Of a stretch of DNA of 64,000 nucleotides, positions 11,919 through 62,248 are shown piece by piece. The first letter of the stretch is position 1. Each line of letters opens with the position of its first letter. Both the position numbers and the translations under genes were made by a program. The notes under the pieces are model-generated. The model had not been told where the DNA came from, searched no databases, and saw only the letters and a list, made by a program, of their open reading frames with translations. Where the stretch lies: IMG/VR virus record IMGVR_UViG_3300036766_000988, positions 186,001 to 250,000 of that record; one strand, 5' to 3'.

Positions 11919-13486
11919 CCCGCATCCCCGTCCCCATCTCCATCGAGAGCGCTGAGATCGGCCGCATCTTCCGCGTCGATCACCGTCTCGGAGGGCTTGG
12001 CCTCTGTCCCTTCCTCGTCGTCACCGAAGGCATCAGACAGATCTTCGAGGATCGCGTCCTCTGCGGACAGCTCCTCATCCGAGATGGCAGTCGGAGCTTG
12101 CGCGATGAGGGCTTCGGAAACCTGGGCCTTCACCTCTTCGAAGACTGCGGTATTGGAGAGCAGGTACGCGCGGAACTTGTCTCGGCTCTGGATGCGTTCG
12201 TTGCCGTACGAGTAGTACGCCCCATCCCGCTTGACGACTCCCGTGGCGACCCCCGACTCGATGACCGAATAGATGTCGTCCACACCGTAGCCATAGCGAA
12301 TGAAGATGTTCGCCGAGTGCCCTTGCTTTGCGTCGGCCTTCGACTTCACCATCTTGATCGCAGTGACGTTGCCATAGGGGAACTTCTTCTTCTTGCCTGT
12401 GGCCATGTCCTTGCGCTCGATCATCTCCGACGAGATACGAGCGAGCCGCAGACGAACGTAGGCGAAGTACTTGAGAGCCTTGCCGCCCGCCGTGTTGGGC
12501 TCGGGGGCACCGTGACCACCGCCCGTCGAAATCGTAGCGCGTTCCTGATTGAGGAAGATGAGGGCCGTGCCCTTGGCGTCCTTGCGGGGCTTCTTGTTCT
12601 CGCCCGTCCCTTCCATCGGGTGCTTCATGAGCCAGAGAGCGAACTTGGGTAGGGTCTCGCTCATCTTCTTTGCGACGGCGCCGATCTTGGCCACATCGTC
12701 GATCTTCTTCTCCAGCTCGTCCTTCGGGACCATGGCGGCGATGGAGTCGACGATGATGAGATCGACTCCAGATGCGATGCCGACGAACATCGCCTTGAAG
12801 CCCTCTTCCATCGTATCGGGAGCAGCGAGCGTCCACGTGTCGTCGAATTTGACCCCGATCTGCTTTGCGTACCCGTGGTGGATGGCGTGCTCGAAGTCGA
12901 GGTACAGAACGGAACCTCCACGGCGCTGCACATCGGCCGCAGCCGCAAGAGCCACCGTGGTCTTACCGCTCGACTCAGGTCCGTAGATCTCGGTGATCTT
13001 CCGACGCGGGTAACCCGGGCATACAGAGCCCTTGCCGTCTTGGGTCTTCGATCCTCCGATGAGGTTGTTGATGATGATCGACCCCGACGGTACGTGGGCC
13101 ATCGTGCTCATTGCCGTCTCGACCGGCTTGATACCGATCTTGTTGAGCATCGAACGCATGAGCGAAGCGGTCTGAGAACCCTGCGATGCAGAAGTCTTGA
13201 CGGTCTTCGCTGCGGGTTTGGCTGCGGGCTTGGCAACCGCAGGAGGCGCCGCCACAGGTTTGGCTGCCACAGGCGTGGCAACAGCGGTCTTGGCCGCCAC
13301 GGGCTTGGGAGGAAGCTCCTTCAGAGCTTCGGGCTTTGCCGCACTGGTCTTCTTCGCGTAGCAGGCTTCACACTCAAGCCGTAGCCCATCTTTGGCTCTC
13401 TTGTCTGGGCCGAACGGCCCAGAGCCCCCACATGCTGTGCAGGTCTTCGTTGCAGTGCTGTCCGTGTTCTTGGGATCGATAGTCAT
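11915..13486 (-). CDS. recA: RecA recombinase with N-terminal zinc ribbon and Pro/Ala/Lys linker
   Basis: EIYGPESSGKTT, IVDSIAA, IFLNQER, GGKALKYFAYVR; acidic tail. Confidence 0.92.
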   Translation of the reverse strand: MTIDPKNTDSTATKTCTACGGSGPFGPDKRAKDGLRLECEACYAKKTSAAKPEALKELPPKPVAAKTAVATPVAAKPVAAPPAVAKPAAKPAAKTVKTSASQGSQTASLMRSMLNKIGIKPVETAMSTMAHVPSGSIIINNLIGGSKTQDGKGSVCPGYPRRKITEIYGPESSGKTTVALAAAADVQRRGGSVLYLDFEHAIHHGYAKQIGVKFDDTWTLAAPDTMEEGFKAMFVGIASGVDLIIVDSIAAMVPKDELEKKIDDVAKIGAVAKKMSETLPKFALWLMKHPMEGTGENKKPRKDAKGTALIFLNQERATISTGGGHGAPEPNTAGGKALKYFAYVRLRLARISSEMIERKDMATGKKKKFPYGNVTAIKMVKSKADAKQGHSANIFIRYGYGVDDIYSVIESGVATGVVKRDGAYYSYGNERIQSRDKFRAYLLSNTAVFEEVKAQVSEALIAQAPTAISDEELSAEDAILEDLSDAFGDDEEGTEAKPSETVIDAEDAADLSALDGDGDGDAG

Positions 13487-14139
13487 GAGGTACCATCCAT
13501 CAATTTGGAAAACCGATAGAATCGAGAGTTCTCTTTGAAGATCGCCCCACAATACACCGTCTCGCCTGCCCGTTCCCCTCTCTTGAGAGTGCGTACCTTC
13601 GCGAATGCTCGATACTCGGACGGTGTGAGGTCGTCGTTGGTGATCTTCTCGTCGAGGCGTAGGAAGAACCGCGCAGCAAACCTCGCCACGTGGTAAGCGT
13701 CCGCCTCATTGTGGTTGAACCGGCCCGTGATACCCGTATCGACTTTCGCTGCCGCTACCATGTCGGCTTTGAACATCTTGCCTTTACGGGCCTTCGGATC
13801 GAGCTTCGCTAGCATCTTCACAGTGCCGGGGTCGAAGTACACGACATCCTTGCGGTGCGTGTAGACCACCTCGTTTGTGTAGACGAAAAGCGCGTAGGCA
13901 CCGGGCGACCATTGCTCGCCGTAAACCGGGGATTCGATGCCTATACACTCGACTTCAGGATGATCCGCGAGGAGCTTCGTCAGCATGTCGCGAAAGTCCA
14001 TGTACCGTTTGACGAAGACCGTTTTGGCCGACGTCGAGAACAGGCCTTTCGCTAGAATGCGTGCGGGTCCCTCGGCCTCCGAATCATGAATGCACCAGCC
14101 GTAGCCAGTGATCGATGGGTCGAATCCAAGTGAGATCAT
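13483..14139 (-). CDS. RuvC-like Holliday junction resolvase
   Basis: LGFDPSITGYG, IGIE, NEADAY. Confidence 0.8.
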   Translation of the reverse strand: MISLGFDPSITGYGWCIHDSEAEGPARILAKGLFSTSAKTVFVKRYMDFRDMLTKLLADHPEVECIGIESPVYGEQWSPGAYALFVYTNEVVYTHRKDVVYFDPGTVKMLAKLDPKARKGKMFKADMVAAAKVDTGITGRFNHNEADAYHVARFAARFFLRLDEKITNDDLTPSEYRAFAKVRTLKRGERAGETVYCGAIFKENSRFYRFSKLMDGTS

Positions 14140-14145
14140 GGCGTG

Positions 14146-14181
14146 AGAAAGGCGGGCCCAGCTACCCGAGCCCGCCTTTCT
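14146..14181 (-). terminator. probable intrinsic terminator after the ssb-like gene
   Basis: 12-bp inverted repeat AGAAAGGCGGGC/GCCCGCCTTTCT, 13 nt downstream of stop. Confidence 0.6.
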
Positions 14182-14194
14182 TGGCCTCTACGGC

Positions 14195-15088
14195 TCAGAC
14201 CTGATCGAGGAGGTCGGTGAAGTCCCCGCCCGACGCTGCATCAGCGCCGACCGACGAGACAGCCGAACCACCCATGCCGAGCTTCGCTCGAAGCTGATCG
14301 GTCGTCATCTCGCGGAACGGGATGAGCTTGTCGTAGAAGGGCATCGCCTTCGCGAGCACCATGTTGCGGAACTTCTCGTGCTTCTGCCAGATGGCCGCGC
14401 CGACGAACGACACGTCGATGTTCTGGTACTGGGCATCCTTGCATTCGAGCTTGATGTCCTGCGAGTGGATCCCCATGCCGTTGCTCTTGAGCCCGGCATT
14501 GAGCTTCCAGATGTTCTCGTAGGTCTTCTTGCCGAAGCGCCACGGCATGATCCGCCAGTCGGTCGTGAGACGCGGCTTCTCGTTCTCCGTGATGTCCCCA
14601 CGAGCATCCGTCGGGTAGAGGATGAGGAGCGTCGTGAAGTAGAGCTTCGGCTCCGCGATCTTCTTCCAGACCGCATCGGCCTCGGGCCCATCTTTGCCGA
14701 GCCGGTTGACGACGAAGCCCAGGCCTGCCTGGTACGAACCCCAGAGCTTCTTCATCTTGACCTCACTGAGGTCGAGACGATCCATCTCCGTGAGCTGATC
14801 GACGGCCTTGACCGGCGTGAGCTGCGCTGCCCGCTCTTCGAGCACCTTGCGAGCGATGCCCCGGATGACCTCCGGCGTGAGCTTCTCGCTCTTCTTCGCA
14901 GCCTCGGCCATCACCTTCGTGACGGCGTTCTTGTCGATCGTGTGGAAGTACACGAAGGCGCCCCGTAGGCACTGGCCCTTCGTCATCTTCAGCCACTCCT
15001 GACGCGGCTGTAGGAACTGCTTCCCGTCCTCGTCGAGCCCCACATCGGACTCGTCCATCGTGTATTCGGTGCTGAAAGGATCACTCAT
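14195..15088 (-). CDS. probable single-stranded DNA-binding protein (phage type)
   Basis: Context beside recA/ruvC; acidic-hydrophobic tail GGDFTDLLDQV; strong codon bias; GGAG RBS. Confidence 0.55.
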   Translation of the reverse strand: MSDPFSTEYTMDESDVGLDEDGKQFLQPRQEWLKMTKGQCLRGAFVYFHTIDKNAVTKVMAEAAKKSEKLTPEVIRGIARKVLEERAAQLTPVKAVDQLTEMDRLDLSEVKMKKLWGSYQAGLGFVVNRLGKDGPEADAVWKKIAEPKLYFTTLLILYPTDARGDITENEKPRLTTDWRIMPWRFGKKTYENIWKLNAGLKSNGMGIHSQDIKLECKDAQYQNIDVSFVGAAIWQKHEKFRNMVLAKAMPFYDKLIPFREMTTDQLRAKLGMGGSAVSSVGADAASGGDFTDLLDQV

Positions 15089-16098: not shown

Positions 16099-16535
16099 TT
16101 GGCCTCACCCTCGCCGTTGCCGTTCCCATTGGAGCCGTTGTCCTGAAGCATCCGTGCGATGCCGTCGTCGTACGAGCCAAGGATCGCCCGCATCTCCTCA
16201 AGGGCCACCGCCTTCGGGGTGATTCCTCGCCGCATGACGTCTTCGTAGGTCGCCGCAACGACGTGCTTCGCGAGCAGGCTACGGATGAGCTTTACGTCTC
16301 TGGGAGCGAACCCGAGCGACTGCTTTTCCTCACCCATCGTCGGGATCTCAGCTCCCGTTCCACGGGACGCCGTGACCGAGTAGAACGCCGACTTCTTCCG
16401 ACCCGCAGGGTCACGATCCTCTATCGAGAAGGACACCGTGAGCTTGTCGAATTGGATGCTATCTTGGAGCTTCTTCAACCGCTCCGACTGTTCCGGCGTG
16501 AGGTTGCTCAGGGGGCTCTTTTTCTGCTCGTTCAT
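16095..16535 (-). CDS. hypothetical protein
   Basis: 146-aa ORF; GGTGTAT 9 nt upstream. Confidence 0.7.
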   Translation of the reverse strand: MNEQKKSPLSNLTPEQSERLKKLQDSIQFDKLTVSFSIEDRDPAGRKKSAFYSVTASRGTGAEIPTMGEEKQSLGFAPRDVKLIRSLLAKHVVAATYEDVMRRGITPKAVALEEMRAILGSYDDGIARMLQDNGSNGNGNGEGEAK

Positions 16536-18744
16536 GGCTCTTCAATACACCGGAAGTTGCTTGAATTGCTTCTGAAACGGCACGTCCGAAGGCCGTGTTT
16601 CGCTGCACTACCTTGTCGTTTGCAATAGCGGCTTGAACCGATGCGGGGTCGCCTAAAAGCCAGCACTTCTTCTTCGCACGGGTGACGGCAGTGTAGAAGA
16701 GGTTACGCTGCCGCATCCTTCCGTACGCCCTAACGAGTGGAAAGATGATCGTGTCGAACTCGGACCCTTGGCTCTTGTGTACGGTGATCGCATACGCAAG
16801 CCGGACCGTCTCGATGGCTTTGCTTTTGGGGATTCGGACGGGCATGTCCACCCCATCGAAACCGTGGATGCCGATCACGAGATCTTCACGGCCAATCGCT
16901 CGTATTTTCCCCATGTCGCCGTTGTAGACGTTCAGCTCGTAATCGTTCTTGGTGATCATCACTCGATCCCCAAGTCGGAAGTGGATCTTTCCGGCCTTCC
17001 ATTCGGCACTCCCTACATCGGGGTTGAGAGCCTCCCGCAACCGGTTGTTGAGGTTCGTGACCCCCACCACCCCATCGTACTTCGGGGAGAGCACTTGGAA
17101 GTTGGCGTCTCGGCTCTTGAGCTTTTCGGCCATCTTCACGATGAGGTCGCAAAGCATGCTTTCATCGGGGCAGTTGATGAACTGGAAATCCGATGTAGAG
17201 GGGCGAGCCTCAAGCGAGAGAGCTTCACCTCGGTTGATCCGGTGGCTCACCTGGACGATTTCGCTCTGCAACGCTTGCCGGAAGATCTGCGTGAGTCGAA
17301 CATGGGGAACCGTGTCACACGCGATGAGTTCCCGAAGTACGTTACCAGGGCCCACGGAGGGGAGCTGCGCATCGTCTCCGACGAGCACCAACATGGTGCT
17401 TGGATGTAGAGCATCGAGGAGCCGGTAGAACAGCTCCTGATCGACCATTGACATCTCGTCTACGATGACGGCCCCAACGGGGAACTTGTTGTAGCTGTTG
17501 AAGCCCCACCGGTCGCCCGTGTACCCCAGGGTTCGGTGGATGGTGGCCGCGTCCGAGCCCGTGACGGCCGCTAGACGCTTGGCAGCGATGCCTGTGGGGG
17601 CCATGAGGAGGTGGGTGACCCCTGTGGCCTTGAAGAGGCGTACGAACGTCTTCACGAGGGTGGTTTTGCCGGTCCCAGGAAGGCCGGTGAGAACCAGGAC
17701 CCGGTTGTCCACCAACAGCCGAACGCCGTCCCGTTGGGCATCCGATAGCTCGATGGCATGACCCTTCTCGTACTCCGCTAGAAATACAGCGAGATCGATG
17801 TCGAGCTTTGAAGGCTTCACGAAGCTGGCCAGCTTGGTCGCCCCATCACGCTCGAAACGGTAGAACTCGGGGAGGTAGACCCCTGCCTCCATGTCGAGCA
17901 CAAGAGCCTTGCTTGCGACGAGCCTATCGACAGCGTCCATGAGCGCCTTGAACATGTCATCTTGTTCGAAGGGCTCGATGTCTTCTTGCTGCATCATCTC
18001 GTCGAGTAGGGTCGGTAGATCCCCACGCCGGATGTAGAGGTGCCCTTGTTGGGCCTCTTGGCGAAGGATCCAGAGCACCGCTCCCTCGATGCGTCGAACG
18101 TCATTGGGAAGAATGCCGATCCGATGGGCTACTCTGTCTGCCCTGGCGAACGTGAATCCCTCGACCGCGATGAGGCGGTACGGGTTCTGTCCGATGATGT
18201 TGGTAGCTTCGAGCCCGAACGCCGCGAAGATCACTTTCACGATGTTCGAGTTGATGTCGTAATCCTGGAGGAAGACCGAGAGCGCGGAGAGGGAACACGC
18301 CGACTGCCATCCCATGATCGCTCGGTCCAACGTCATCCGCTTCGGATCTTCATCCGTGAAAAGACGCCGCAACTCGTCGGGGGCGTTCGATAGCTTGTCG
18401 TAGGCATCGAGCCCATAGAGGGTCACGAGGAGCTTCACCATCTCGGGATCCTCGAATCCCGATAGACAGTACGAGAGGAACCGCTCGACATCCGGCACTG
18501 TTTTCGCGTAGGGCTTCCATCCGAACGGCCGTACCTGTTTGCCGTACTTCGGATGCTCAACCCATTCCCCCACGATCCCTAGCGGGACACCCGACTTCAC
18601 TTGCACGAGTCCACTCAGGGAACCAGAGACCATGACTGTCTTCGAACGTGTCGCGGGCTCCGCTGCTTCGACACTCATTTCGAAGACTGCGAACCCTTCG
18701 TTCTGATGACGAATGTTCAGAACACGTCCGAAGAAGGTAGCCAC
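16459..18744 (-). CDS. recD2: RecD2-like SF1B helicase
   Basis: GLPGTGKTT, IVDEMSMVD, GDDAQLPSVGPG, YAITVHKSQGSEF; N-terminal HhH region. Confidence 0.9.
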   Translation of the reverse strand: MATFFGRVLNIRHQNEGFAVFEMSVEAAEPATRSKTVMVSGSLSGLVQVKSGVPLGIVGEWVEHPKYGKQVRPFGWKPYAKTVPDVERFLSYCLSGFEDPEMVKLLVTLYGLDAYDKLSNAPDELRRLFTDEDPKRMTLDRAIMGWQSACSLSALSVFLQDYDINSNIVKVIFAAFGLEATNIIGQNPYRLIAVEGFTFARADRVAHRIGILPNDVRRIEGAVLWILRQEAQQGHLYIRRGDLPTLLDEMMQQEDIEPFEQDDMFKALMDAVDRLVASKALVLDMEAGVYLPEFYRFERDGATKLASFVKPSKLDIDLAVFLAEYEKGHAIELSDAQRDGVRLLVDNRVLVLTGLPGTGKTTLVKTFVRLFKATGVTHLLMAPTGIAAKRLAAVTGSDAATIHRTLGYTGDRWGFNSYNKFPVGAVIVDEMSMVDQELFYRLLDALHPSTMLVLVGDDAQLPSVGPGNVLRELIACDTVPHVRLTQIFRQALQSEIVQVSHRINRGEALSLEARPSTSDFQFINCPDESMLCDLIVKMAEKLKSRDANFQVLSPKYDGVVGVTNLNNRLREALNPDVGSAEWKAGKIHFRLGDRVMITKNDYELNVYNGDMGKIRAIGREDLVIGIHGFDGVDMPVRIPKSKAIETVRLAYAITVHKSQGSEFDTIIFPLVRAYGRMRQRNLFYTAVTRAKKKCWLLGDPASVQAAIANDKVVQRNTAFGRAVSEAIQATSGVLKSHERAEKEPPEQPHAGTVGAVEEAPR

Positions 18745-18745
18745 G

Positions 18746-19024
18746 TCAGACCTCGCTCAAGTTGTCGGCACGGAACTCATCGATCGAGTGTCCGCCCATC
18801 TGCCAGAGAGCACCCTGGATAAAGCAGAGCCAGCGCACCGCCTTGTCGGGGTTCGCCACTGCGTTGTTCTTCGCTTCGATGACCATCCAGTAGAGATGCC
18901 CTAGGCTTTCGGCCTGAGAGGGATTGCGGCCATCGACCGGGAATCGAAACGGTCGGACCCCAGGCCTGAGTTCGAAGATAGCCGCGTAGCGATTGAGTGC
19001 TTTGATGATTTGGTCTGCGGTCAT
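18746..19024 (-). CDS. hypothetical protein
   Basis: MTADQIIKAL start with ATGA overlap and GGAG RBS. Confidence 0.65.
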   Translation of the reverse strand: MTADQIIKALNRYAAIFELRPGVRPFRFPVDGRNPSQAESLGHLYWMVIEAKNNAVANPDKAVRWLCFIQGALWQMGGHSIDEFRADNLSEV

Positions 19025-20943
19025 GACTCCACCATCTTGAGGAGATCGTCCTCGGTGATGCACTTCGTCCCGTTCTTGGCCGCTGCTTTGGCCTTCGTCG
19101 ATCCCGATGCGGGGTCCGCCATCACGAGGTACGTAAGCCCCTTGCCTACGCTGGTCTTCACGATCCCGCCGTGCTCGGCAACGATGGCTTCGAGGTCGCT
19201 TCGCTTCCGCACACTCTTGCCGGTAAAACAGAACGAAAAGCCAGTCAGGTTGCCCTGGATCGGGGCCTTGATCTTGACCCCGGCTTTGAGCATCCCCGGC
19301 ACGACAGTCCTGCCAACCTCTTCGACCCATTTCCAGAGGGCCTTCGCCTTGATCGGCCCGAGCCCAGGAACGGTCTCGAATTGCTGCTCGGAACAGCCTT
19401 GGATCTTCTCCCACGTGTCGTATCCAGCATCCATGACCATGCGGATTGTCGATGACGCGCAGAGCGGGATGGAGAGCGCCCCCAGAAGGGTTTCGAGCGG
19501 CAGCTCGTTCTTTTCCCAGAGGAGCCCGAGGAGCTTGTCTGCCAAAGTCTCGGTGATACGCTCGACTTCCGAGAGACTCGGGATGTTGAGCTGGTAGAGA
19601 TCGGCGGGGGTTTTGACCTTCCCGCTGGTCACCAAGCGCTCGATGAGGGTCTCCCCCCACTCCTTTACGTCAAGGGCCGCGATGTACCGCTGGATGCGCC
19701 CCATAGCCTGAGCAGGGCACCCGGCTGTGTTGGGACAGACGAGGTACTCCCCGTCGACCGTGAGGGCGGCTTTGCACGAAGGGCACTCTTCGGGAAAGTC
19801 GTAGTCCCCATCCGCTTCCTCGATCACCTGCGTGACCCTGGGGATGACATCGTTGGCCCGTGCCACCAGGATCCGGGATCCCACCAAGATCCCCAGGTCT
19901 TGGATGTACTTCATGTTGTAGAGGCTTGCGTTCGTGACCTCTGCTCCTACGAGCTGCACAGGATCGAACACAGCAACCGGCGTGATCCGACCCGAGCCCC
20001 CCACCTGCCAGAGGATGTCACGCAGGATCGTCTCACGAGCGACCGCAGCAAACTTGAACGCCACAGCCCCCTTGGGCCGCCCATCCTTCTCCCCGAGCGC
20101 GAGCTGCCGTTCGAAACTGTTGACGGAGAACACGAGCCCGTCGATGTCGTAGTTGAGCGTTTCGCGCATCCCCTCTTGGTAGTCCAATCGGATCGTCTCG
20201 GGAGTCGCCCCACCGGATTGCATCACGGTGACACATGAATTGGGGAGCTTGAACCCCTGGTGAGCAAGCCACTCGAATTGCTGCGCCTCGGTCGAGAAAT
20301 CCTTCCCGTCGGCTACTCGATAGAAGAGCACCGTCAAGTGCTCGCATCCCTTGCCGTCGTACCGCTTCGAGGTACCGGCAGCAGTGTTCCGTGTGTTGGC
20401 CTTGTCAGGGAAGTGCGCCGCATGATCCTGCTTCGTCAGGATGATCTCCCCACGAAGGCTTCCGGTGAACTTCTCGGGAAGCTGGGCCAGCACCCCCTTC
20501 ATCTTGGCGACGTTGGGGGTGATGTCCTCGCCCGTTGTCCCATCGCCACGCGTGATGGCTTGGGTGAAGACGCCGTTCACGTACCTGGCGTGGATCGAGA
20601 TCCCATCGAGCTTCTCGCTCATGAAGAGGGCCTCGATGTCGGAGATGCCGTTGCCCACAGCCCAAACCCCCAGCTCCTCGGGGGTGTTCACCTTGTCGAG
20701 AGAGCCCATCGGGATGCCATGCCGGACCTTCGGCCACTCCGAGGTGGCGGGTACGGGGGCGCCGATGGCCGTGACGGCAGGGGCATCTGCTTGCAGCTCG
20801 CGAAGCTCGTCCACCCAGGCATCGAACACTTCGTCGGTGGTCGTCGGGACCCCGTTGAAATAGTCGAGCCGAGCTTGGTTGATCTGGGCTTGGAGCTTTT
20901 GGATCCGAGCGTCGTTTGCCGCTGCCATCATCTCTTCGAGCAC
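19021..20943 (-). CDS. ligA: NAD-dependent DNA ligase
   Basis: SEKLDG, RGDG, DIDGLV, Zn finger CPSC..C..C, C-terminal BRCT (FCFTG). Confidence 0.95.
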   Translation of the reverse strand: MLEEMMAAANDARIQKLQAQINQARLDYFNGVPTTTDEVFDAWVDELRELQADAPAVTAIGAPVPATSEWPKVRHGIPMGSLDKVNTPEELGVWAVGNGISDIEALFMSEKLDGISIHARYVNGVFTQAITRGDGTTGEDITPNVAKMKGVLAQLPEKFTGSLRGEIILTKQDHAAHFPDKANTRNTAAGTSKRYDGKGCEHLTVLFYRVADGKDFSTEAQQFEWLAHQGFKLPNSCVTVMQSGGATPETIRLDYQEGMRETLNYDIDGLVFSVNSFERQLALGEKDGRPKGAVAFKFAAVARETILRDILWQVGGSGRITPVAVFDPVQLVGAEVTNASLYNMKYIQDLGILVGSRILVARANDVIPRVTQVIEEADGDYDFPEECPSCKAALTVDGEYLVCPNTAGCPAQAMGRIQRYIAALDVKEWGETLIERLVTSGKVKTPADLYQLNIPSLSEVERITETLADKLLGLLWEKNELPLETLLGALSIPLCASSTIRMVMDAGYDTWEKIQGCSEQQFETVPGLGPIKAKALWKWVEEVGRTVVPGMLKAGVKIKAPIQGNLTGFSFCFTGKSVRKRSDLEAIVAEHGGIVKTSVGKGLTYLVMADPASGSTKAKAAAKNGTKCITEDDLLKMVES

Positions 20944-20964
20944 GCGTGACCTCCGCTCCCTCTC

Positions 20965-20990
20965 CTACACCGGGGAGCGGAGGTGTTCAG
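20965..20990 (-). promoter_or_regulatory. bipartite promoter-like motif CTGAAC-N13-GGTGTAG upstream of ligA
   Basis: Exact motif and spacing repeated at other loci. Confidence 0.7.
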
Positions 20991-21244
20991 CCTGCCTTGG
21001 GAGCCTGACTCGCGGAAATCTGTCCACTTTCGACCATCTGAGCCACCTTGTTGATGGTGGCAAAGGGCACGAGGATGACGCGCACCTCTTCGTTCTGGTA
21101 GCGTTCGAGCGCGGCCTGAACATCGAAGTACTCGAAGGTGCCATCTTGCTGAGCGCAGCGGAGCACCATGCGTCCTGTCATGGGGTCGATCTCCACAACC
21201 CCTTCCTTCACGTGTCCGAGATCCAGTTGGTCATCCGTAGGCAT
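20987..21244 (-). CDS. hypothetical protein
   Basis: 85-aa ORF with RBS. Confidence 0.65.
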   Translation of the reverse strand: MPTDDQLDLGHVKEGVVEIDPMTGRMVLRCAQQDGTFEYFDVQAALERYQNEEVRVILVPFATINKVAQMVESGQISASQAPKAG

Positions 21245-21277
21245 GGCGCCCCCTTCGTTCTGAGAGATCAGAAGCTG

Positions 21278-23584
21278 TCAGACGATGCTACAGGCCCCTC
21301 CGGCACACGCCACCTCGCTCTTGAGGTCGGTGTCGTCGGTGTCCTCCAACATCGTCGTGTAATCAACAGGCTGGTAGTCTTCGAGGATGGCGTTCCATCG
21401 AGCCTCGTCGACCGGGGTGACCACCGCTTCGTTGGGCGCGAAGGCGTAGTCTTTGTCTCCTGTGCTGGCGAGAAGCGAGACCCCTGTGAAGAACTCCCGG
21501 TTCTCCCAAAGGTAGTCCGCCACCTTGTCCCACTCTTCGGGCCGCACCGTCACGGTGTTGGAGACGTTGTGGCTGAGGCCTGGCGAGTACTGGCTGTCTG
21601 CGGTGCCTGCAAGCACCCAGTTCTCTTGTGTGGACTTCACCATATCGAGGAACGGGATGGCTGTGATGTCGTCCTTGATGGTTGCTCCCGGAGGAGCTTC
21701 GACCGGAAACTCGATCACGTACTTCCCATCCGGCTTGCGGACGCACATGTGGGGGTTGACCACCTTGAAGGCCTGGAAGACCTGCTCCAATTCATCCGCC
21801 GTCACACGACGGATGTACCGACGAGCATGGTGAGCGTGGTGTCCCGAGCCGACGCAGCCGAGTTCGAGAGACGTGGTCCCTGATGGCTTTACACAGGTGG
21901 TGCGAGCCGCAGGCTTGACCCCGATACGCGCTGCGTATTCGGCATTCCACTGCTTGATCAACCCAGCAACCTCTCGCTGGTACTCCGGGTTGCAGGCGAT
22001 GGCGGGAGCATCGAGCATCCCTGTCATACCGATCCCCAAGAGAGCCTCACGTTCGGCGATTGTCTCTGAGATCGCTCCGAGGTAGGGCATCTTCGTGTAC
22101 CCCGCTTGGAGCGTACCGATGATCGCTGCTGCCCTGGCTGCCTCTTTGAAGTCCTGTAGGGACGTCAGTTTGGCTGCGTTGATCTCACAGAGGTTGCAGA
22201 AGGCCCAACCCGTGTAAGTCTGACCGACCGCTGTCTCGACGCCTTTCGCCGCGAGTTTCGCCTGAGCTTCGGCGTCGATTTCGAGCTTGGGGTTCAAGCC
22301 AATCTCACAGCACGGGTTCGTGCCGTAGTCGTAGTCGTTCGTGAAGTAGAACCCAGGCTCTCCCCACTGACGAGTCATTCCGAAGATGCGCTTGAACTGC
22401 TTTTTCTTCACCTCGTCCCGTTTGAGGACGACGCTGTTGTTGGAGTTCGCCAGCCAGGGCTCTGTGGAATACCAGTTCCCTGTCTTGAGGTGCATCATCT
22501 CGCTGTCATCGAGCGAGAAGAGGCAGATCATGGCCGACCGACGAATGCCCCCCGAAAGGACGGCATCGGCTGCATGACAGAGGATTCGGTGGCACTCGAC
22601 CGGGCGGAGCTTACGCCCCATGGCGGCATTCAGAACGCCTCGGATGCGTTCCAAAGAGTCCTTGAGCTTGAGGTGCCCAGGAGCCCGCCCCCCCGACGTA
22701 CGGAGGGGCGTGCCTGCATCCCGGATTTGGTGGAAGGCGAACTCCAAGTTCACACCATCGAGAAAGCTCTGGACCAGCGCCTTGAGGGCGTCTGCCCACC
22801 CCTCGATGGTATCCTCGACGACGTGATGGCGAACCTTCTTCACGTCTACGTAGGAGATCGACGGAAGCTTCTCGATGTGGTCGAACTGAACCGAATACCC
22901 CACGCCGCAACCCGATAGGAGCAGGTAGAGAGCCTCCGAGAAGATTTCGGGACGATCGACGAGTGAAAACGAGCAGTTGTAGATGCGGTTGTTGTTGGCG
23001 AGAATGGCCTTGCCACCGAACTGCATGGATCGCATGGACGGTAGAACGCGCTTGTCTCGTACGAGATCGAAGGCCCAACGGATCTCCTCTTCCATCTCGG
23101 GATACACGTCGAGGTGCATCCCCTCGATGCGGGCGACGGTCTCGGCGAAGACCTCGCGACGCTTCTTGGCGGGTAGGTAGCGGGCGTACTTCCCCGCGTG
23201 GATGTAATCGGAGATGGCCTTGGGATCAGGCGACTTCGGAGTACGCGCTTGACGAGCCTCTGTCCGTTGATGCCGATATAGAATGAACGCCTTGGCAACC
23301 CCAAACTGGCTGTGTCGCATGAGGGCGGTCTCGACGGCATCCTGCACGTTCTCGACGCAGACGGTCTCTTCCGTCAGAGCGTCCATCACCGTGTTGATGA
23401 CCTTGTTCAGAGCCCGTTCATCGACGAGACCCTTCGACTCGATCCATGCCCGACTGAGGGCTCTACGGATCTTGGACACATCGAAGAGTTGAAGTGTCTG
23501 CCCATCCCGTTTACGAATGTGCTGTAGGGTTCTCACTACCGTGAGGTTCGGTTCGAGAGCACTCTGTACGCTAGGGGCCATCAT
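21278..23584 (-). CDS. nrdJ: class II (B12-dependent) ribonucleotide reductase with ATP-cone
   Basis: IRKRDG ATP-cone, YNCSF, TNPCCEI, CNL, KPSGT, C-terminal CAGGAC. Confidence 0.92.
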   Translation of the reverse strand: MMAPSVQSALEPNLTVVRTLQHIRKRDGQTLQLFDVSKIRRALSRAWIESKGLVDERALNKVINTVMDALTEETVCVENVQDAVETALMRHSQFGVAKAFILYRHQRTEARQARTPKSPDPKAISDYIHAGKYARYLPAKKRREVFAETVARIEGMHLDVYPEMEEEIRWAFDLVRDKRVLPSMRSMQFGGKAILANNNRIYNCSFSLVDRPEIFSEALYLLLSGCGVGYSVQFDHIEKLPSISYVDVKKVRHHVVEDTIEGWADALKALVQSFLDGVNLEFAFHQIRDAGTPLRTSGGRAPGHLKLKDSLERIRGVLNAAMGRKLRPVECHRILCHAADAVLSGGIRRSAMICLFSLDDSEMMHLKTGNWYSTEPWLANSNNSVVLKRDEVKKKQFKRIFGMTRQWGEPGFYFTNDYDYGTNPCCEIGLNPKLEIDAEAQAKLAAKGVETAVGQTYTGWAFCNLCEINAAKLTSLQDFKEAARAAAIIGTLQAGYTKMPYLGAISETIAEREALLGIGMTGMLDAPAIACNPEYQREVAGLIKQWNAEYAARIGVKPAARTTCVKPSGTTSLELGCVGSGHHAHHARRYIRRVTADELEQVFQAFKVVNPHMCVRKPDGKYVIEFPVEAPPGATIKDDITAIPFLDMVKSTQENWVLAGTADSQYSPGLSHNVSNTVTVRPEEWDKVADYLWENREFFTGVSLLASTGDKDYAFAPNEAVVTPVDEARWNAILEDYQPVDYTTMLEDTDDTDLKSEVACAGGACSIV

Positions 23585-23597
23585 GTATTCGATCCTT

Positions 23598-24566
23598 CTA
23601 CCCGGCGACTGAAAGCACAGCCAACTCGACGTGTGTACGCGGCGAGCTGGATTGACCCTTTACATTTGCATCTAATCGGCACAACCGGCCCATGCTTCGA
23701 ATAAGATCCCTCAGTAGGTGCTTACGCGCTTGAAGGAGAAGAGAGTTCTTGAATTTGAATGGGTGCATCCCAATCGAGGCTGCGATGTCGTCCTCGGATA
23801 TCCCGCGATCGAGTAACGAGCGAACAACGATAAGCTGCTCGACCCTTTTCATGAGAGCGTAGGCGATGGGCACATCCGCATCGTCCCCCATGTTTTTGTA
23901 GACCGTGGACAACCAGTTCATCGCTTGCCGTGGGTTTTTGTCGGCTGCCGCTTCAGCTACTTGGTAAGGGGTGGCTGTCTGCGCTGGAGAGATGACGAGC
24001 TTCAAGTGCTCCATCGTCGCCTTCTCTTTGCCTACCAGGATGGAGAGCTTCTGTAGTTCACTTGCAATGCGGTATAGATTACTCCCGAGAAGGAAGAAGA
24101 AAGCATCGGCAACACCCTTGTCGAGGGTGATCCCAATACGTCGAGCCTCGGTCTCGACCCACTTCACAACCTCGTTGTTGTTGTCCCAAGTCTTCAACTT
24201 CTTGTGCTCAAGAAGTTTGCCCTTCTTGGCAGCTTGAGCCCAAACGGCAGGGCACTTCTCGGAGCGGATGATCGCGACCAACACCGTCGTATCGTCCTTG
24301 GGGTTCTTCTCGTCGATGTACTGCTTCAGGGCCTTATCGCCCTTGATTTTGTTGGCCTCGTCCACAATGACGACACGAAGGGTGTCGTCCATCGAGCGGG
24401 TCTCGCAAATCCCAACGAGTTCCACGTCTGTGAGGTCATCCCCATCAACAAGCACGACTGTACGGCCGTCCCACTTGCGGGCACGCTCTAGATCTCGATC
24501 GAGGAAGAGAGGCTCAACCCCAAACGAAATGACAAAAGGGACGCTGGTTGTGGCTTTTGCAGCCAT
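23598..24566 (-). CDS. holA: DNA polymerase III delta subunit
   Basis: GVEPLFL, ELQKL, GMHPF, RLDANVKG features; 322 aa. Confidence 0.8.
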   Translation of the reverse strand: MAAKATTSVPFVISFGVEPLFLDRDLERARKWDGRTVVLVDGDDLTDVELVGICETRSMDDTLRVVIVDEANKIKGDKALKQYIDEKNPKDDTTVLVAIIRSEKCPAVWAQAAKKGKLLEHKKLKTWDNNNEVVKWVETEARRIGITLDKGVADAFFFLLGSNLYRIASELQKLSILVGKEKATMEHLKLVISPAQTATPYQVAEAAADKNPRQAMNWLSTVYKNMGDDADVPIAYALMKRVEQLIVVRSLLDRGISEDDIAASIGMHPFKFKNSLLLQARKHLLRDLIRSMGRLCRLDANVKGQSSSPRTHVELAVLSVAG

Positions 24567-25525: not shown

Positions 25526-25712
25526 TCTCGCCGCTTCCAAGCTGGGCCGAGCGGCGTAGGGGCTCCACTGGAACGAGCTGCATCACCAGATGAAAGTTCT
25601 GGCCGCAATTCGAACAGATGAAACGATGGGGCTCCTGTCCACTCGGCGAGAGTTGACTGCGGCACGTGCTACACCGCATGAGCGATTCAGGAGATGTCGA
25701 TTCTTCGGGCAT
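25506..25712 (-). CDS. small zinc-ribbon protein
   Basis: CSTC...CSNC. Confidence 0.6.
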   Translation of the reverse strand: MPEESTSPESLMRCSTCRSQLSPSGQEPHRFICSNCGQNFHLVMQLVPVEPLRRSAQLGSGENAERRS

Positions 25713-36798: not shown

Positions 36799-38114
36799 CT
36801 GGCGAGCTTCTGTTCGATGGCGTTGAGCGCTGTCTCGATCGAAGCCACCCCGCCCTTGTCTCCGAAGACGTAGGGGACGTGATTGGTCTTACAGGCATCG
36901 GTGATCTTGTTGCTGGTCTTGTGCCCGATGAGCCCTTCGAGAAGGATGATGGCGCACACGCCGCCGGTACGAATCCGATGCGCCATTGATTCGACCGACT
37001 TCATGGAATCGCTGTCGGTCTCATGCCATTCGACCTTGACCCCGAAGCGATTTGCGCAGAGTTCGATCTTCTCGTTGACGACGAGGCCTCCGACGATGAA
37101 GAGGGGTTTCTTCTGCATCGCAGCCCGGAGCGAAGGAAGCTTCGGCCACGAGTGCAGGATCGAGGTCTTCTCGGCTTCAACCTTCGGTTTTGGGGTGGCT
37201 TTGACCGGCCCCTGCGAGGCCACGAAGGCGGTGTCGCGATCGAACTGCGCAACCTTACGACGGCCTTCCGAGGCGATCTTCTCCCACTCTCCGTAGGAGC
37301 CGAAGGCCAGGCCTTTGATGTAGTCCGAGATGCCGCTCTCGGCCTTCATGCCCCCCAAGACAGGCATGAGCTGCCCGATGCGTTCGTACAGGAAGTGATC
37401 CTCGGGCAGACGATCTTGGAGACCCCGACCTTCGGCTACCAGCGCCTGAAGCAGGGGATAGAGCCGGGTTGGATGGTTGTCTTGCACCTTGCCGCTGAGA
37501 GCTTCGATTTCAGCGACGAGTCTCTTCGCTTTCTCGACATCCGTGGAGAGAAGCTTTCGTTTTGCGGACGGCTTCACCTCCGACTTCGCGAGTAGATGGG
37601 CGAACGTCTCGGGTTTTTCTTCCGCCGCCGGTGCCGTCGTCTTGAGAGACAACGAGGTGTCCACAACATGGACGTCAACGACCGACGACGGACCCACTAA
37701 AGGGAGGACACCTCCCACGAGTTCGCATACTTCGAGCAGCGCAGTGCGAAGAGCCGTGCGACTGGTCTCTGCTCCCTCGACATCGGGCATGGGTTCTTGC
37801 CCGAGTGCGGTCAGAACCGAGTTCAAAACACGTCGTTCCGCTTCTTGTCGAGCGACCGTCTCGTACGTGTCGAGATGAGTCTTGAGCCGCGCCATCTTCT
37901 CGGCCACGGGCTTCATCTCGGTGTCGACCTTCTTGAGCGCAGCGGTCTGTATCGTGTCGGGTAACTTGGACGCGACAGGGGCAGCAGCAACCATCGGGGG
38001 CTCCTCCGTAGGTACAGGGTTGGGTTTTTTCGGGCGCGGCTTGATCGCCCAGGGCTCGACTTCACGCGCCACAGCCTTCAAATAGCCGGAGATGGACGGG
38101 CCGTAGTGGGGCAT
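36795..38114 (-). CDS. protein with C-terminal DUF2325-like domain
   Basis: LFIVGG...AIILLEGLIGH...ACK..HVPYVF..GG.ASI. Confidence 0.65.
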   Translation of the reverse strand: MPHYGPSISGYLKAVAREVEPWAIKPRPKKPNPVPTEEPPMVAAAPVASKLPDTIQTAALKKVDTEMKPVAEKMARLKTHLDTYETVARQEAERRVLNSVLTALGQEPMPDVEGAETSRTALRTALLEVCELVGGVLPLVGPSSVVDVHVVDTSLSLKTTAPAAEEKPETFAHLLAKSEVKPSAKRKLLSTDVEKAKRLVAEIEALSGKVQDNHPTRLYPLLQALVAEGRGLQDRLPEDHFLYERIGQLMPVLGGMKAESGISDYIKGLAFGSYGEWEKIASEGRRKVAQFDRDTAFVASQGPVKATPKPKVEAEKTSILHSWPKLPSLRAAMQKKPLFIVGGLVVNEKIELCANRFGVKVEWHETDSDSMKSVESMAHRIRTGGVCAIILLEGLIGHKTSNKITDACKTNHVPYVFGDKGGVASIETALNAIEQKLAS

Positions 38115-38166
38115 GTGCCTCTCTTACTGATACACCGCCCCGAACGGTGTAGCGTAGCCACGTGAC

Positions 38167-41036: not shown

Positions 41037-41113
41037 GGGCCCTCATACACCGCTGCTCGAACGCAGTGGAGCGCGAGACGTACGAAATTCTCTTCGGTGG
41101 TGTAGGACAGGGC

Positions 41114-45054: not shown

Positions 45055-45795
45055 ATGAACACGGTATTCAGAGCTGGCCGCTGGGTGATCGGTAAGGTGT
45101 GGGAGAAGATCAACCTCCCGGCCATCTACCGCGAGCTGCGAGGCCTTGGACGCAAACACGGGAAGCGTTTCTTCTGGGCCGCGCTCATTTGGGAGCTGAT
45201 CGAGGACGTGCTGTTTCCGTATCTTTCGTGGCTCGCCGGGATGCCAGAGCTGATCCCTCTCTTCCTCGTGTTGCACTTCGAGCCGATCGTCTACCCGGTC
45301 TTTTTCTGGGCTTTCCGTACGTATGACCGCGCCAAAGGCCGCGAGCCGTGGGAGCCTGATCGCTCCGCGCAGTCGAGCCACTGGCGTTCCGTCGCCAAAG
45401 TCGGGGTCTACAAGATCGCTACGCTCGGATGGTTCGTCGCCATCTTCCTCGTCTGGCACGCTACGCCGAAGATGCTCGTGCTCTACGCCATCCTGATGGC
45501 GCTCTTCGGATTCATTCACGAACGGATCTGGCACGACTCCAACTACGGGATCCTTCCGAACGATCAAGTCGAAGGCCGTCGGATCTTCATGAAGGCCATG
45601 ACCTACCGCATCGTGTCGACGATGATCTTCTATCCCTTCCTTCGCGTCTCCCTCGGGGTTGTGCCCTGGAAGCTCCTGGGGCTCTGTCAGGGGGTTGGGT
45701 TGGTTCTCTACCTCGTGCTCGAATCCGTGTGGGCTCGTTCGATGTGGGGATGCTCTCCCGTACCGCAGCTCAAGGTCAAGGAAGTGCCATGCTGA
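45055..45795 (+). CDS. membrane protein with two DUF2061-like repeats
   Basis: RSVAKVGVYKI...FIHERIW and KAMTYRIVS...LVLESVW; several TM helices. Confidence 0.65.
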   Translation: MNTVFRAGRWVIGKVWEKINLPAIYRELRGLGRKHGKRFFWAALIWELIEDVLFPYLSWLAGMPELIPLFLVLHFEPIVYPVFFWAFRTYDRAKGREPWEPDRSAQSSHWRSVAKVGVYKIATLGWFVAIFLVWHATPKMLVLYAILMALFGFIHERIWHDSNYGILPNDQVEGRRIFMKAMTYRIVSTMIFYPFLRVSLGVVPWKLLGLCQGVGLVLYLVLESVWARSMWGCSPVPQLKVKEVPC

Positions 45796-50724: not shown

Positions 50725-50764
50725 GTCTTTATTTACACCGCTTCTCGTGGTGTAGAGATCCCTT

Positions 50765-56616: not shown

Positions 56617-56660
56617 TACGAAAGCGCCGGGAGGTAAGATTCCTCTGCGGCGCTTTCGTA
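56617..56660 (+). terminator. hairpin/terminator after H1-like gene
   Basis: 13-bp inverted repeat TACGAAAGCGCCG/CGGCGCTTTCGTA. Confidence 0.6.
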
Positions 56661-61801: not shown

Positions 61802-62248
61802 ATGCCGGACGATACCAAAAACCTGAACATCCGTGGGAGAGTCGTGGGGCGTGACCACTGGACGCCGGAAGACCACGCCGAGTGGGCCCGAAGATCCAGG
61901 GCCAACGGTGAGGTACACAGGGCACGGCGCCAAGCTCTCGTCGACTTCGGTTGGGAACTCCACGACCGACGTTGCTCTCACCATCACGGCGGCGAATGGG
62001 CTCTGGATCCGCTCGGTGGGGAGCACGTCACTCACGAAGAAGCCTACCGACGTCAGGAAGAACGTCGGCCGGGTTCGATCCCGAGCTGGCCGACGTTCGA
62101 CAACGACTGGAAGCCGCCCTCATCAAACGAGGGGCTGATGACCATCAGCGAGTTGAAGATCCAGCCCCTTCAGGCACCGTCTGGGCTGATCTTCTACCAA
62201 GAATACGGTGAGATGTTCAAGGACAACGCGAAGACAGAGAAGCCATAA
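61802..62248 (+). CDS. hypothetical protein
   Basis: GGAGG RBS. Confidence 0.6.
   Translation: MPDDTKNLNIRGRVVGRDHWTPEDHAEWARRSRANGEVHRARRQALVDFGWELHDRRCSHHHGGEWALDPLGGEHVTHEEAYRRQEERRPGSIPSWPTFDNDWKPPSSNEGLMTISELKIQPLQAPSGLIFYQEYGEMFKDNAKTEKP

What the first reader, a model, noticed from the sequence alone, without database searches (positions are those of the whole stretch)
20943..20990. Promoter-in-a-hairpin switch hiding the ligA ribosome-binding site
Seen: a perfect 12-bp inverted repeat (20984-20973 ACCUCCGCUCCC / 20960-20949 GGGAGCGGAGGU) whose 3' arm holds the SD GGAGGU 5 nt before the GUG, with GGTGTAG in the loop. Read-through mRNA would occlude the SD, while a transcript starting near 20956 lacks the 5' arm. 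Established: T4 uses this logic for late genes such as e and soc. Inference: temporal control of the DNA ligase.
Basis: partly seen in the sequence, partly recalled or inferred. Interest (0 to 1): 0.6.

Follow-up and report, generated by a model that had tools for sequence, protein, structure and literature searches.

The report
Promoter-in-hairpin gate on phage ligase
In an uncultivated giant phage, a strong RNA hairpin hides the ribosome-binding site of the DNA ligase gene on any message arriving from upstream. A promoter-like motif that recurs across this phage family sits in the hairpin's loop, so the gene's own shorter message should be open; this matches a control logic known from phage T4 but has no RNA data behind it yet.

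Summary
A perfect 12-bp inverted repeat (20984-20973 / 20960-20949, minus strand) has a 12-nt loop, and its 3' arm holds the SD GGAGGU 5 nt before the ligA GUG (20943).

- **Stability:** the hairpin alone folds at -25.7 kcal/mol (z -4.5). In a read-through RNA, the ligA initiation region is the most occluded of all 380 predicted genes in the 252-kb phage record.
- **Loop motif:** the loop word GGTGTA(G) is not incidental. It is an exact, family-wide signal. In this record 51 of 170 copies lie exactly 15-16 nt before an ATG, and those genes lack an SD. Genes with the motif further upstream carry an SD. The motif also forms back-to-back divergent pairs, precedes the tmRNA gene, and abuts a canonical terminator in a relative. 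It is best read as a -10-only promoter giving leaderless or short-leader mRNAs.
- **Consequence at ligA:** the predicted start (about 20955-20957) falls inside the 3' arm, so the gene's own transcript lacks the 5' arm and is unusually unstructured.
- **Relatives:** ligA orthologues in related megaphages repeatedly carry unrelated hairpins with the same logic.

No RNA data exist. "Temporal" control is unsupported, because a same-class motif lies 4.7 kb upstream. Translational coupling to the upstream 85-aa gene is a live rival. I classify this as a new member of a known kind.

The parts
20987..21244 (-). Upstream gene p85 (85 aa, unknown function); its stop TGA is at 20989-20987, 2 nt before the 5' arm.
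   Evidence: ORF. No Pfam or PHROG match. tblastn finds homologues just upstream of ligA in about 30 related loci. There is a weak YonK-like resemblance, which is a lead only.
20973..20984 (-). 5' arm of the hairpin (ACCUCCGCUCCC). Its first six bases are the anti-SD that pairs with GGAGGU.
20961..20972 (-). 12-nt loop.
20965..20971 (-). GGTGTAG, a copy of the family-wide promoter-like motif (consensus cGGTGTAg); its first G is at 20971.
   Evidence: Genome-wide statistics are. Relatives are covered.
20955..20957 (-). Predicted transcription start, 14-16 nt after the motif's first G. This is inferred, not mapped.
   Evidence: 51 of 170 motif copies have ATG exactly 15 or 16 nt after the first G. 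No RNA data exist.
20949..20960 (-). 3' arm of the hairpin (GGGAGCGGAGGU); the SD GGAGGU occupies 20954-20949.
20941..20943 (-). GUG start codon of ligA, 5 nt after the SD. In the longer fold it is partly paired with the last codons of p85.
   Evidence: The N-terminus aligns with relatives whose starts are fixed by the motif.
19021..20943 (-). ligA, NAD-dependent DNA ligase, 640 aa.
   Evidence: Pfam DNA_ligase_aden, DNA_ligase_OB, HHH_5 and BRCT. There are thousands of homologues, the best at 67% identity.
25670..25675 (-). Nearest upstream same-strand GGTGTA motif, ahead of the operon that runs through the clamp-loader-like gene, the RNR and p85 into ligA.
   Evidence: No convincing terminator lies between it and ligA.
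21278..23584 (-). Ribonucleotide reductase-like gene (ATP-cone); upstream context in the same orientation.
16459..19024 (-). Downstream genes p92 (18746-19024, overlapping the ligA stop) and the RecD2-type helicase (16459-18744).

Best explanation
The element makes ligA translation depend on which transcript carries the gene.

On any RNA that enters from the upstream gene p85, the 12-bp hairpin forms and buries the SD GGAGGU, with an outer helix reaching the GUG. Ribosomes therefore cannot start on their own.

The hairpin loop carries GGTGTA(G), which I interpret as this phage family's compact promoter. It resembles a -10 element, has no -35 element, and is probably read with a phage-encoded factor. 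At most genes it sits 15-16 nt before the start codon and gives leaderless mRNA. At ligA it sits 28 nt before the GUG. Transcription would then begin at about 20955-20957, inside the 3' arm. That RNA has no 5' arm, a 13-nt leader with a free SD, and little structure.

The outcome is that ligase is made mainly from its own promoter and is insulated from upstream read-through. This is the logic of T4 genes e, soc, 49 and I-TevI.

Shown here: the sequence anatomy, the folding energetics, the motif statistics, and the recurrence of the design in relatives. Inferred: that the motif is a promoter, where transcription starts, and the effect on translation. Whether the gate is temporal is unknown.
For: **Hairpin energetics**
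- The hairpin alone folds at -25.7 kcal/mol, z -4.5.
- The ligA initiation region is the most occluded of 380 genes in the read-through context, at 22.8 kcal/mol. This falls to 6.2 in the RNA from the predicted start.
- That short RNA is less structured than 191 of 200 shuffles.

**The motif behaves as a promoter**
- 51 of 170 exact GGTGTA copies have ATG at +15 or +16, against 2-3 per other offset.
- One-mismatch variants are not enriched.
- No other conserved block appears within 40 nt upstream.
- Of the 52 genes with the motif at 14-17 nt, only 10% have an SD of 5 nt or more. About 10 of 14 genes with the motif 26-45 nt upstream have an SD.
- Motif genes have wider upstream gaps and seldom overlap their neighbour. 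The motif is enriched at divergent junctions, 34% against 19%, p 0.011.
- There are 9 back-to-back divergent motif pairs against 1.7 expected, with spacers as short as 4-9 nt.
- A copy lies 26 nt before the tmRNA gene.
- In relative L083 a canonical terminator (15 pairs plus a T tail) abuts the motif before a leaderless-type ligA.
- In five related megaphage records, motif-N10-ATG occurs 120 times, against 11 for the reversed control and 12 for an N16 spacing.
- A TA signal about 10 nt before the start codon is the published signature of leaderless genes (PMC3160421).

**Gene-specific recurrence**
- 39-40 of 56 distinct syntenic ligA junctions carry the motif, and 28 of 39 have it at 15-17 nt.
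- ligA initiation regions in relatives are more occluded than neighbouring genes in the same loci: median +4.4 kcal/mol, Wilcoxon p 4e-5, and 40% at 15 kcal/mol or more against 8%. Against this record's genes the Mann-Whitney p is 1e-5.
- The stems are unrelated in sequence. The 5' arm lies either before the motif, putting the motif in the loop (L003, L166, L096, L100), or between the motif and the start codon (L002, L008, L127, L046, L009/L011). In every case it lies upstream of the predicted start.

**Precedent**
- The T4 examples are described in PMC3014915.
Against: - No 5' end has been mapped, and no RNA library holds this DNA. The promoter role of the motif rests on statistics.
- The closest ligA relatives (63-65% identity) do not share this hairpin, so there is no covariation test for this particular stem. 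The orthologue comparisons are not phylogenetically independent.
- The p85 stop lies 2 nt before the 5' arm. A terminating ribosome would cover about 8 of the 12 arm bases, including all six that pair with the SD. Read-through RNA therefore need not be silent.
- The nearest upstream promoter-like site is the same motif class, which removes the obvious basis for a temporal switch.
- Placement of the motif in a hairpin loop is not a general habit of this genome: 11 of 170 sites against about 10 at random positions.
- In 16 syntenic relatives ligA has no motif, and in six of them (L006, L007, L033, L055, L057, L061) its start overlaps the p85 stop. Insulation from upstream is therefore not universal.
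Confidence: 0.5

Rival explanations
1. Translational coupling. The main job of the hairpin is to tie ligA translation to that of the upstream gene p85 on a polycistronic RNA. A ribosome terminating at UGA 20989-20987 unwinds the base of the stem (ACCUCC paired with GGAGGU), frees the SD, and allows initiation at the GUG. The promoter in the loop would be an additional, independent feature.
For: - The stop codon lies 2 nt before the 5' arm, and the anti-SD is the stop-proximal part of that arm.
- In the longer fold, the last p85 codons also pair with the GUG region.
- In six syntenic relatives (L006, L007, L033, L055, L057, L061) p85 and ligA overlap as ATGA or nearly so, with no motif, so coupling of this gene pair does occur in the family.
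- In L003, L166 and L096 the 5' arm begins only 5-6 nt after the p85 stop.
Against: - With only a 43-nt spacer, any 5' arm must lie close to the stop, so proximity is partly forced.
- Relatives with equally strong occlusion place the 5' arm 17 nt or more past the stop (L002, L008, L127), or have no ORF ending nearby (L009 and L011, with gaps of 368 and 414 nt). Coupling cannot work there.
- Coupling alone does not explain why the conserved motif is kept between the arms.
Confidence: 0.25
2. Terminator or 3'-end stabiliser. The hairpin ends or protects the upstream RNR-p85 transcript, and the ligA promoter simply sits in its loop because the genome is compact. On this reading, SD sequestration is a side effect.
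For: - The hairpin lies directly after a stop codon.
- Relative L083 has a true terminator at the equivalent place, just before the motif.
- In the same record, a 10-bp hairpin with the motif in its loop and a T-run after it follows another gene (G000 about 66230-66262).
Against: - No U-tract follows the stem on either strand, and the loop is 12 nt. The terminator scan does not call it.
- Terminators that are recognisable in these phages do carry T tails.
- A stabiliser has no need to include the whole SD of the next gene, and such pairing is normally selected against.
Confidence: 0.1
3. The motif is not a promoter. Instead it would be an RNA-level signal, such as a processing site for a phage endonuclease that creates leaderless 5' ends, or an SD-independent ribosome-recruiting element. 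The hairpin would then act in some other way.
For: - The fixed spacing to start codons would also fit a processing or translation signal.
- GGUG can pair with the 16S rRNA 3' end.
- No TSS data exist.
Against: - Back-to-back divergent pairs with 4-9 nt spacers leave no room for separate promoters.
- The motif precedes the non-coding tmRNA gene and follows a terminator in L083.
- Genes with the motif further upstream carry a normal SD as well.
- The invariant TA cannot pair with the anti-SD, and an 11-nt gap from GGUG to the start codon is long for an SD.
Confidence: 0.1
4. DNA-level operator or neutral palindrome. The inverted repeat would be a binding site for a dimeric repressor flanking the promoter, or a functionless local inverted duplication.
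For: - The two arms flank the promoter-like motif symmetrically.
- Compared with the closest relatives, the window has 12 extra bases between the motif and the GUG, consistent with a recent local rearrangement.
Against: - The 12-mer has no other copy beyond chance: 11 matches at up to 2 mismatches against 12 expected.
- Relatives have stems of unrelated sequence and shifted position, which fits RNA structure but not a conserved protein site.
- A functionless hairpin that buries the SD of an essential replication gene should be selected against.
Confidence: 0.05

Closest known systems
Phage T4 genes e (lysozyme), soc, 49 and I-TevI: the initiation region is sequestered on long early or middle transcripts and freed on transcripts from a late promoter inside the structure (PMC3014915).
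   Same: - The SD and/or start codon is paired with an upstream strand.
- A compact -10-type promoter with no -35 element lies within the structure, so the gene's own transcript lacks the 5' strand.
- Related phages keep the design while the sequences drift.
   Different: - The phage lineage is unrelated: an uncultivated megaphage of about 0.4-0.5 Mb at 59% GC.
- The promoter word differs (GGTGTA rather than TATAAATA).
- The target is a replication enzyme rather than a lysis, capsid-decoration or homing gene.
- No evidence shows that the long and short transcripts belong to different time classes.
- An upstream ORF ends at the foot of the stem.
- Nothing has been tested experimentally.
Translational coupling through ribosome-mediated unfolding of an inhibitory helix. 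Examples from my own knowledge are the RNA phage MS2 coat-replicase pair and some E. coli ribosomal-protein and atp operons; I did not check these in the papers here.
   Same: The downstream SD is paired with sequence at the end of the upstream ORF, and the stop codon lies within ribosome reach of the helix.
   Different: A promoter-like motif sits in the loop, and relatives show the same occlusion without any nearby stop codon.
Leaderless-gene promoters of Actinobacteria and Deinococcus-Thermus: a TA-like -10 signal about 10 nt before the start codon (PMC3160421; also PMC4007540).
   Same: - The TA of the motif lies 10-12 nt before the start codon at a rigid distance.
- These genes lack an SD.
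- GUG as well as AUG starts are used.
   Different: - The conserved word is GGTGTA, with no T at the last position of a TANNNT hexamer.
- It is exact, since one-mismatch forms are not enriched.
- It is shared by phages of 47-62% GC, which suggests a phage-encoded specificity factor.

Membership tests
T4-type promoter-gated initiation-region hairpin (e, soc, 49, I-TevI) | The SD and/or start codon is held in a stable helix on transcripts that begin upstream. | tested here: met
   A 12-bp perfect stem includes the whole SD. Opening costs 22.8 kcal/mol, rank 1 of 380 genes. This is in silico only.
T4-type promoter-gated initiation-region hairpin (e, soc, 49, I-TevI) | A promoter is placed so that its transcript lacks the 5' strand of the helix. 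| tested here: inconclusive
   The promoter-like motif is in the loop and the predicted start falls in the 3' arm. The promoter identity is well supported statistically, but no 5' end has been mapped.
T4-type promoter-gated initiation-region hairpin (e, soc, 49, I-TevI) | Read-through transcripts from upstream promoters actually reach the gene. | tested here: inconclusive
   The genes are co-directional and tightly spaced. No terminator-like site lies between 25675 and 20990 apart from weak intragenic hits. No RNA data exist.
T4-type promoter-gated initiation-region hairpin (e, soc, 49, I-TevI) | The upstream and internal promoters belong to different temporal classes. | tested here: not met
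   The nearest upstream same-strand promoter-like site (25675-25670) is the same GGTGTA class. Other promoter classes further upstream cannot be excluded.
T4-type promoter-gated initiation-region hairpin (e, soc, 49, I-TevI) | The long transcript is poorly translated and the short one well translated. | not testable with these tools
   This needs reporter fusions, toeprinting or ribosome profiling.
Translational coupling by ribosome unfolding | The upstream stop codon lies within ribosome reach of the inhibitory strand. | tested here: met
   The stop at 20989-20987 lies 2 nt before the 5' arm, whose first six bases pair with the SD.
Translational coupling by ribosome unfolding | Downstream translation depends on upstream translation. 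| not testable with these tools
   This needs p85 start or stop mutants in a reporter.
Intrinsic (rho-independent) terminator | A GC-rich stem with a short loop, followed by a U-tract. | tested here: not met
   The stem is GC-rich, but the loop is 12 nt and no T-run follows on either strand. The scan does not call it.
Leaderless-type promoter signal (TA-like signal about 10 nt before the start codon) | A conserved signal at a rigid distance of about 10 nt before start codons of genes that lack an SD. | tested here: met
   Searches cover this record. Searches cover the relatives.
Leaderless-type promoter signal (TA-like signal about 10 nt before the start codon) | The transcript 5' end coincides with the start codon. 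| not testable with these tools
   No RNA runs hold this DNA.
Known RNA families (Rfam 15) | A match to a curated covariance model. | tested here: not met
   No match at gathering score in the window, and none at E up to 1 in 20700-21300.

The most novel reading that the evidence does not exclude
A whole clade of roughly 0.25-0.5 Mb megaphages uses a previously undescribed, exact -10-only promoter word (GGTGTA). It is probably read through a divergent phage sigma-like protein, and it produces mostly leaderless mRNAs. Within this system the DNA ligase gene has repeatedly and independently evolved hairpins whose 5' strand lies upstream of the transcription start. Ligase would then be translated only from its own promoter. 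This would be convergent, promoter-gated translation of a replication enzyme, and the window holds its most extreme example.
Probability: 0.4. Interest if true: 0.65.

Novelty: new member of a known kind. Interest (0 to 1): 0.5.

Why it matters
Gene regulation in uncultivated huge phages is almost unknown. If this reading is right, the window supplies three things:
- A simple sequence rule (GGTGTA 15-16 nt before the start codon) that marks transcription units and true start codons across a large megaphage clade. The rule would improve annotation of these genomes.
- Evidence that these phages rely heavily on leaderless mRNAs.
- A clear case, repeated with different sequences in relatives, of the T4-style trick in which mRNA structure makes translation depend on which promoter was used, here applied to DNA ligase.

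It also gives a small, easily synthesised element (about 60 nt) for testing promoter-gated translation and p85-ligA coupling in reporters.

Tried and rejected
**Searches that returned nothing**
- Near-identical DNA in phage records: none.
- Close relatives found with the single ligA protein in viral contigs: none. An alignment query was needed instead.
Their N-termini do not encode this hairpin.
Laying its contigs on 3,001 bases (under the 6,000 limit) only confirmed the sequence.
- Rfam matches: none.
- Literature search for the motif: nothing relevant in the held library.

**Ideas tested and dropped**
- A sigma-70-type promoter at the site: none called.
- The arm 12-mer as a repeated operator: only chance-level matches.
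- Terminators preceding motif sites genome-wide: uninformative, 2 of 81 against 2 of 299.
- Motif-in-loop as a general design of this genome: not enriched.

**Phage transcription machinery**
- No RNA polymerase beta-like gene was found in this record or in two complete relatives. The T7-type model rang in no control genome, so that answer says nothing.
- The sigma-like ORF has no match to solved structures by sequence. It remains a lead only.

I did not fold proteins or predict complexes, because no claim here rests on them.
Full report
**Source of the window.** The window is bases 186001-250000 of a 252,183-bp IMG/VR virus record. CheckV estimates it as 53% complete, and its GC content is 59.5%. 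No close relative exists among deposited phages. The one public run holding this DNA is a sediment metagenome. The neighbourhood is a co-directional replication block on the minus strand:
- a clamp-loader-like gene (23598-24566)
- an ATP-cone ribonucleotide reductase (21278-23584)
- an 85-aa ORF, here called p85 (20987-21244)
- NAD-dependent DNA ligase (19021-20943)
- a 92-aa ORF
- a RecD2-type helicase (16459-18744)

**The observation.**
- p85 stops at TGA 20989-20987.
- The 5' arm is 20984-20973.
- The 12-nt loop is 20972-20961 and holds GGUGUAG.
- The 3' arm is 20960-20949 and ends in the SD GGAGGU.
- A 5-nt spacer follows, then GUG at 20943.

No in-frame start lies upstream of that GUG. 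The pair is perfect over 12 bp.

**Strength of the hairpin.** The 40-nt hairpin folds at -25.7 kcal/mol, z -4.48, with no shuffle of 200 as stable. Perfect stems of this size are rare but over-represented in the record, about 8 against 0-1 in shuffles, and they are enriched between genes. I called 380 genes crudely. For each I computed the energy needed to make positions -12 to +9 around the start single-stranded in an RNA running from 60 nt upstream. ligA needs 22.8 kcal/mol, the highest of all 380; the median is 9.1. An independently assembled contig is identical across the region.

**The loop motif: spacing and exactness.** The decisive lead was the loop word. GGTGTA occurs 170 times in the record. 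In 51 cases an ATG follows exactly 15 or 16 nt after the first G, while every other offset has 0-7. The aligned sites show only a compact consensus, cGGTGTAg, with nothing conserved in the 40 nt before it. One-mismatch variants are not enriched, so the word is exact.

**The loop motif: relation to SD sequences.** Of the 52 genes with the motif 14-17 nt upstream, only 10% have an SD of 5 nt or more. Genes whose motif lies 26-45 nt upstream mostly do have an SD, about 10 of 14, and ligA is among them. This either/or pattern is expected if transcription begins about 15 nt after the motif. The RNA then starts either at the start codon, which is leaderless, or with a short leader that needs an SD.

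**The loop motif: further support for a promoter.**
- Motif genes have wider upstream gaps and rarely overlap their neighbour. The motif is enriched at divergent junctions, 34% against 19%.
- There are 9 back-to-back divergent pairs against 1.7 expected, some with only 4-9 nt between the two copies. That leaves no room for another promoter.
- One copy lies 26 nt before the tmRNA gene.
- In relative L083 a canonical terminator with a T tail abuts the motif, which is followed 16 nt later by the ligA start.
- A TA-like signal about 10 nt before start codons is the published signature of leaderless genes (PMC3160421).

**Which genes carry the motif.** They include a nucleotidyltransferase, a DNA methyltransferase, a helicase, the DNA polymerase, RtcB, GroEL and ligA. 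A block of very large genes at 1-20 kb of the record has none. At least one other promoter class must therefore exist. Canonical terminators are rare, 4 near 380 gene starts, so long read-through RNAs are likely.

**What might read the motif.** No RNA polymerase beta-like gene was found here or in two complete relatives. A conserved ORF of about 300-420 aa gives weak Sigma70 region-2 hits in three genomes. This is a lead for the factor that reads the motif, and nothing more.

**Relatives.** ligA homologues are very numerous; the best is 67% identical. I collected 165 related loci, which gave 116 distinct ligA upstream junctions. Of these, 56 share the RNR / p85 / ligA / RecD2 synteny.
- The motif precedes ligA in 39-40 of the 56 syntenic junctions but in only 3 of 60 non-syntenic ones.
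- In 28 of 39 it lies 15-17 nt before the start codon, mostly 16.
- In five whole related records, two of them complete at 398 and 407 kb, motif-N10-ATG occurs 120 times. The reversed control gives 11 and an N16 spacing gives 12.

The motif is therefore a clade-wide signal across genomes of 47-62% GC. The window is the exception at ligA. It has 12 extra bases between the motif and the start compared with its closest relatives, and those bases create both the SD and the 3' arm.

**Recurrence of occluding hairpins at ligA.** The closest relatives (63-65% identity) do not share this stem, so covariation of this particular helix cannot be tested. The design, however, recurs with unrelated sequences.
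- In L003, L166, L096 and L100 the 5' arm precedes the motif, which sits in the loop, and the 3' arm contains the start codon.
- In L002 (a 13-bp stem), L008, L127, L046 and L009/L011 the 5' arm lies between the motif and the start codon and pairs with the first codons.
- In all of these the 5' strand lies upstream of the predicted transcription start.

In 25 relatives, the read-through context makes the ligA initiation region harder to open than those of neighbouring genes in the same locus. The median difference is +4.4 kcal/mol, Wilcoxon p 4e-5, and 40% reach 15 kcal/mol or more against 8%. Against this record's own genes the Mann-Whitney p is 1e-5. These loci are related to one another, so the p-values overstate independence. 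The differing stems nonetheless argue for repeated selection. Other relatives solve the junction differently:
- a terminator followed by the motif (L083, L084)
- no motif at all, with p85 and ligA overlapping as ATGA (L006, L007, L033, L055, L057, L061)

**Mechanism.** The best-supported model is promoter-gated translation. RNA arriving from upstream folds the hairpin and hides the SD. RNA started from the loop motif begins at about 20955-20957, lacks the 5' arm, costs only 6.2 kcal/mol to open, and is less structured than 191 of 200 shuffles. This is the logic documented for T4 genes e, soc, 49 and I-TevI (PMC3014915).

Two qualifications apply.
- Nothing supports a temporal meaning. The nearest upstream same-strand promoter-like site, at 25675-25670, is the same motif, and no terminator is evident in between. 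The gate may set dosage or insulate ligA rather than time it.
- The p85 stop is 2 nt from the 5' arm, and the stop-proximal six bases of that arm are the ones that pair with the SD. A terminating ribosome, which covers roughly 9-10 nt past the stop codon by general knowledge of footprints, would melt the helix. On long RNAs ligA may therefore be translationally coupled to p85 rather than silent. Relatives with the 5' arm far from any stop codon argue that occlusion, not coupling, is the conserved theme. For this window, though, the two cannot be separated without experiment.

**Readings considered and given low weight.**
- An intrinsic terminator: no U-tract follows, the loop is 12 nt, and the scan does not call it.
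- A protein operator: the arm sequence is unique in the record, and the stems are not conserved among relatives.
- A known RNA family: none matched.
- The motif as an RNA processing or ribosome-recruiting signal: this is disfavoured by the divergent pairs, the tmRNA copy, the terminator-motif junction and the coexistence with SDs. Only 5'-end chemistry can exclude it.

**Verdict.** The temporal claim is unsupported. This is a new, untested member of a known kind of control. It is embedded in what appears to be an undescribed promoter and leaderless-mRNA system of a megaphage clade.

Noticed in passing
window 38131-38151, 41046-41104, 50734-50754 (and G000 45263-45279, 170542-170557): Back-to-back divergent copies of the GGTGTA motif (TACACC, a 4-47 nt spacer, then GGTGTA) sit between divergent genes, each 15-24 nt before a start codon. 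They look like compact bidirectional promoter pairs.
   Followed up: partly
window 14146-14181: A second perfect 12-bp hairpin with a 12-nt loop lies between genes 14195-15088 and 13483-14139 on the minus strand. It is flanked by A-rich and T-rich runs, so it looks like a bidirectional terminator. It is one of very few terminator-like sites in the record.
   Followed up: no
window 56617-56660: A perfect 13-bp inverted repeat with an 18-nt loop lies in the intergenic space after the plus-strand gene ending at 56601. Its function is unknown.
   Followed up: no
G000 62869-88477 and 36908-36981 (outside the window): The record carries 54 tRNA genes and a tmRNA (tag ANDNSTALPALLAA), all on the minus strand. 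They include a tRNA with anticodon CUA, which ARAGORN calls Pyl and which could act as an amber suppressor. TAG is still a common stop codon in long ORFs.
   Followed up: no
G000 135002-135922, minus strand (outside the window); homologues at G001 about 396.1-397.0 kb and G004 about 58.7-59.8 kb: A conserved ORF of about 300-420 aa gives weak, sub-threshold Sigma70 region-2 hits in three related megaphages (33% identity between G000 and G001, E 3e-46). It is a candidate for the factor that reads the GGTGTA motif.
   Followed up: partly
window 20987-21244: p85 has no Pfam or PHROG family. It is conserved next to ligA across the clade and shows only a weak feature and structure resemblance to YonK-like small phage proteins.
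   Followed up: partly
L085, L087 and the contig of P0009 (RNR gene upstream of ligA); L073 and L076 (ligA itself): In some relatives the RNR gene is 1031-1074 aa with intein and LAGLIDADG hits, against 768 aa here. In L073 and L076 the ligA match spans about 2.7 kb instead of 1.9 kb, which suggests an insertion (intein or intron) in the ligase gene.
   Followed up: no
G000 66230-66262, minus strand (outside the window): A 10-bp hairpin with GGTGTA in its loop is followed by a T-run, then an SD and ATG 37 nt after the motif. It is a possible terminator that embeds the promoter of the next gene.
   Followed up: no
G000 161577-161610 (outside the window): A run of about 11 G, a short spacer, and a run of about 11 C lie inside a predicted coding region. 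This may be an assembly oddity or a slippage-prone tract.
   Followed up: no
window 62060-62098: An 11-bp perfect hairpin has a loop containing a T-loop-like GGTTCGATCCC, but ARAGORN and Rfam call no tRNA in the window.
   Followed up: partly
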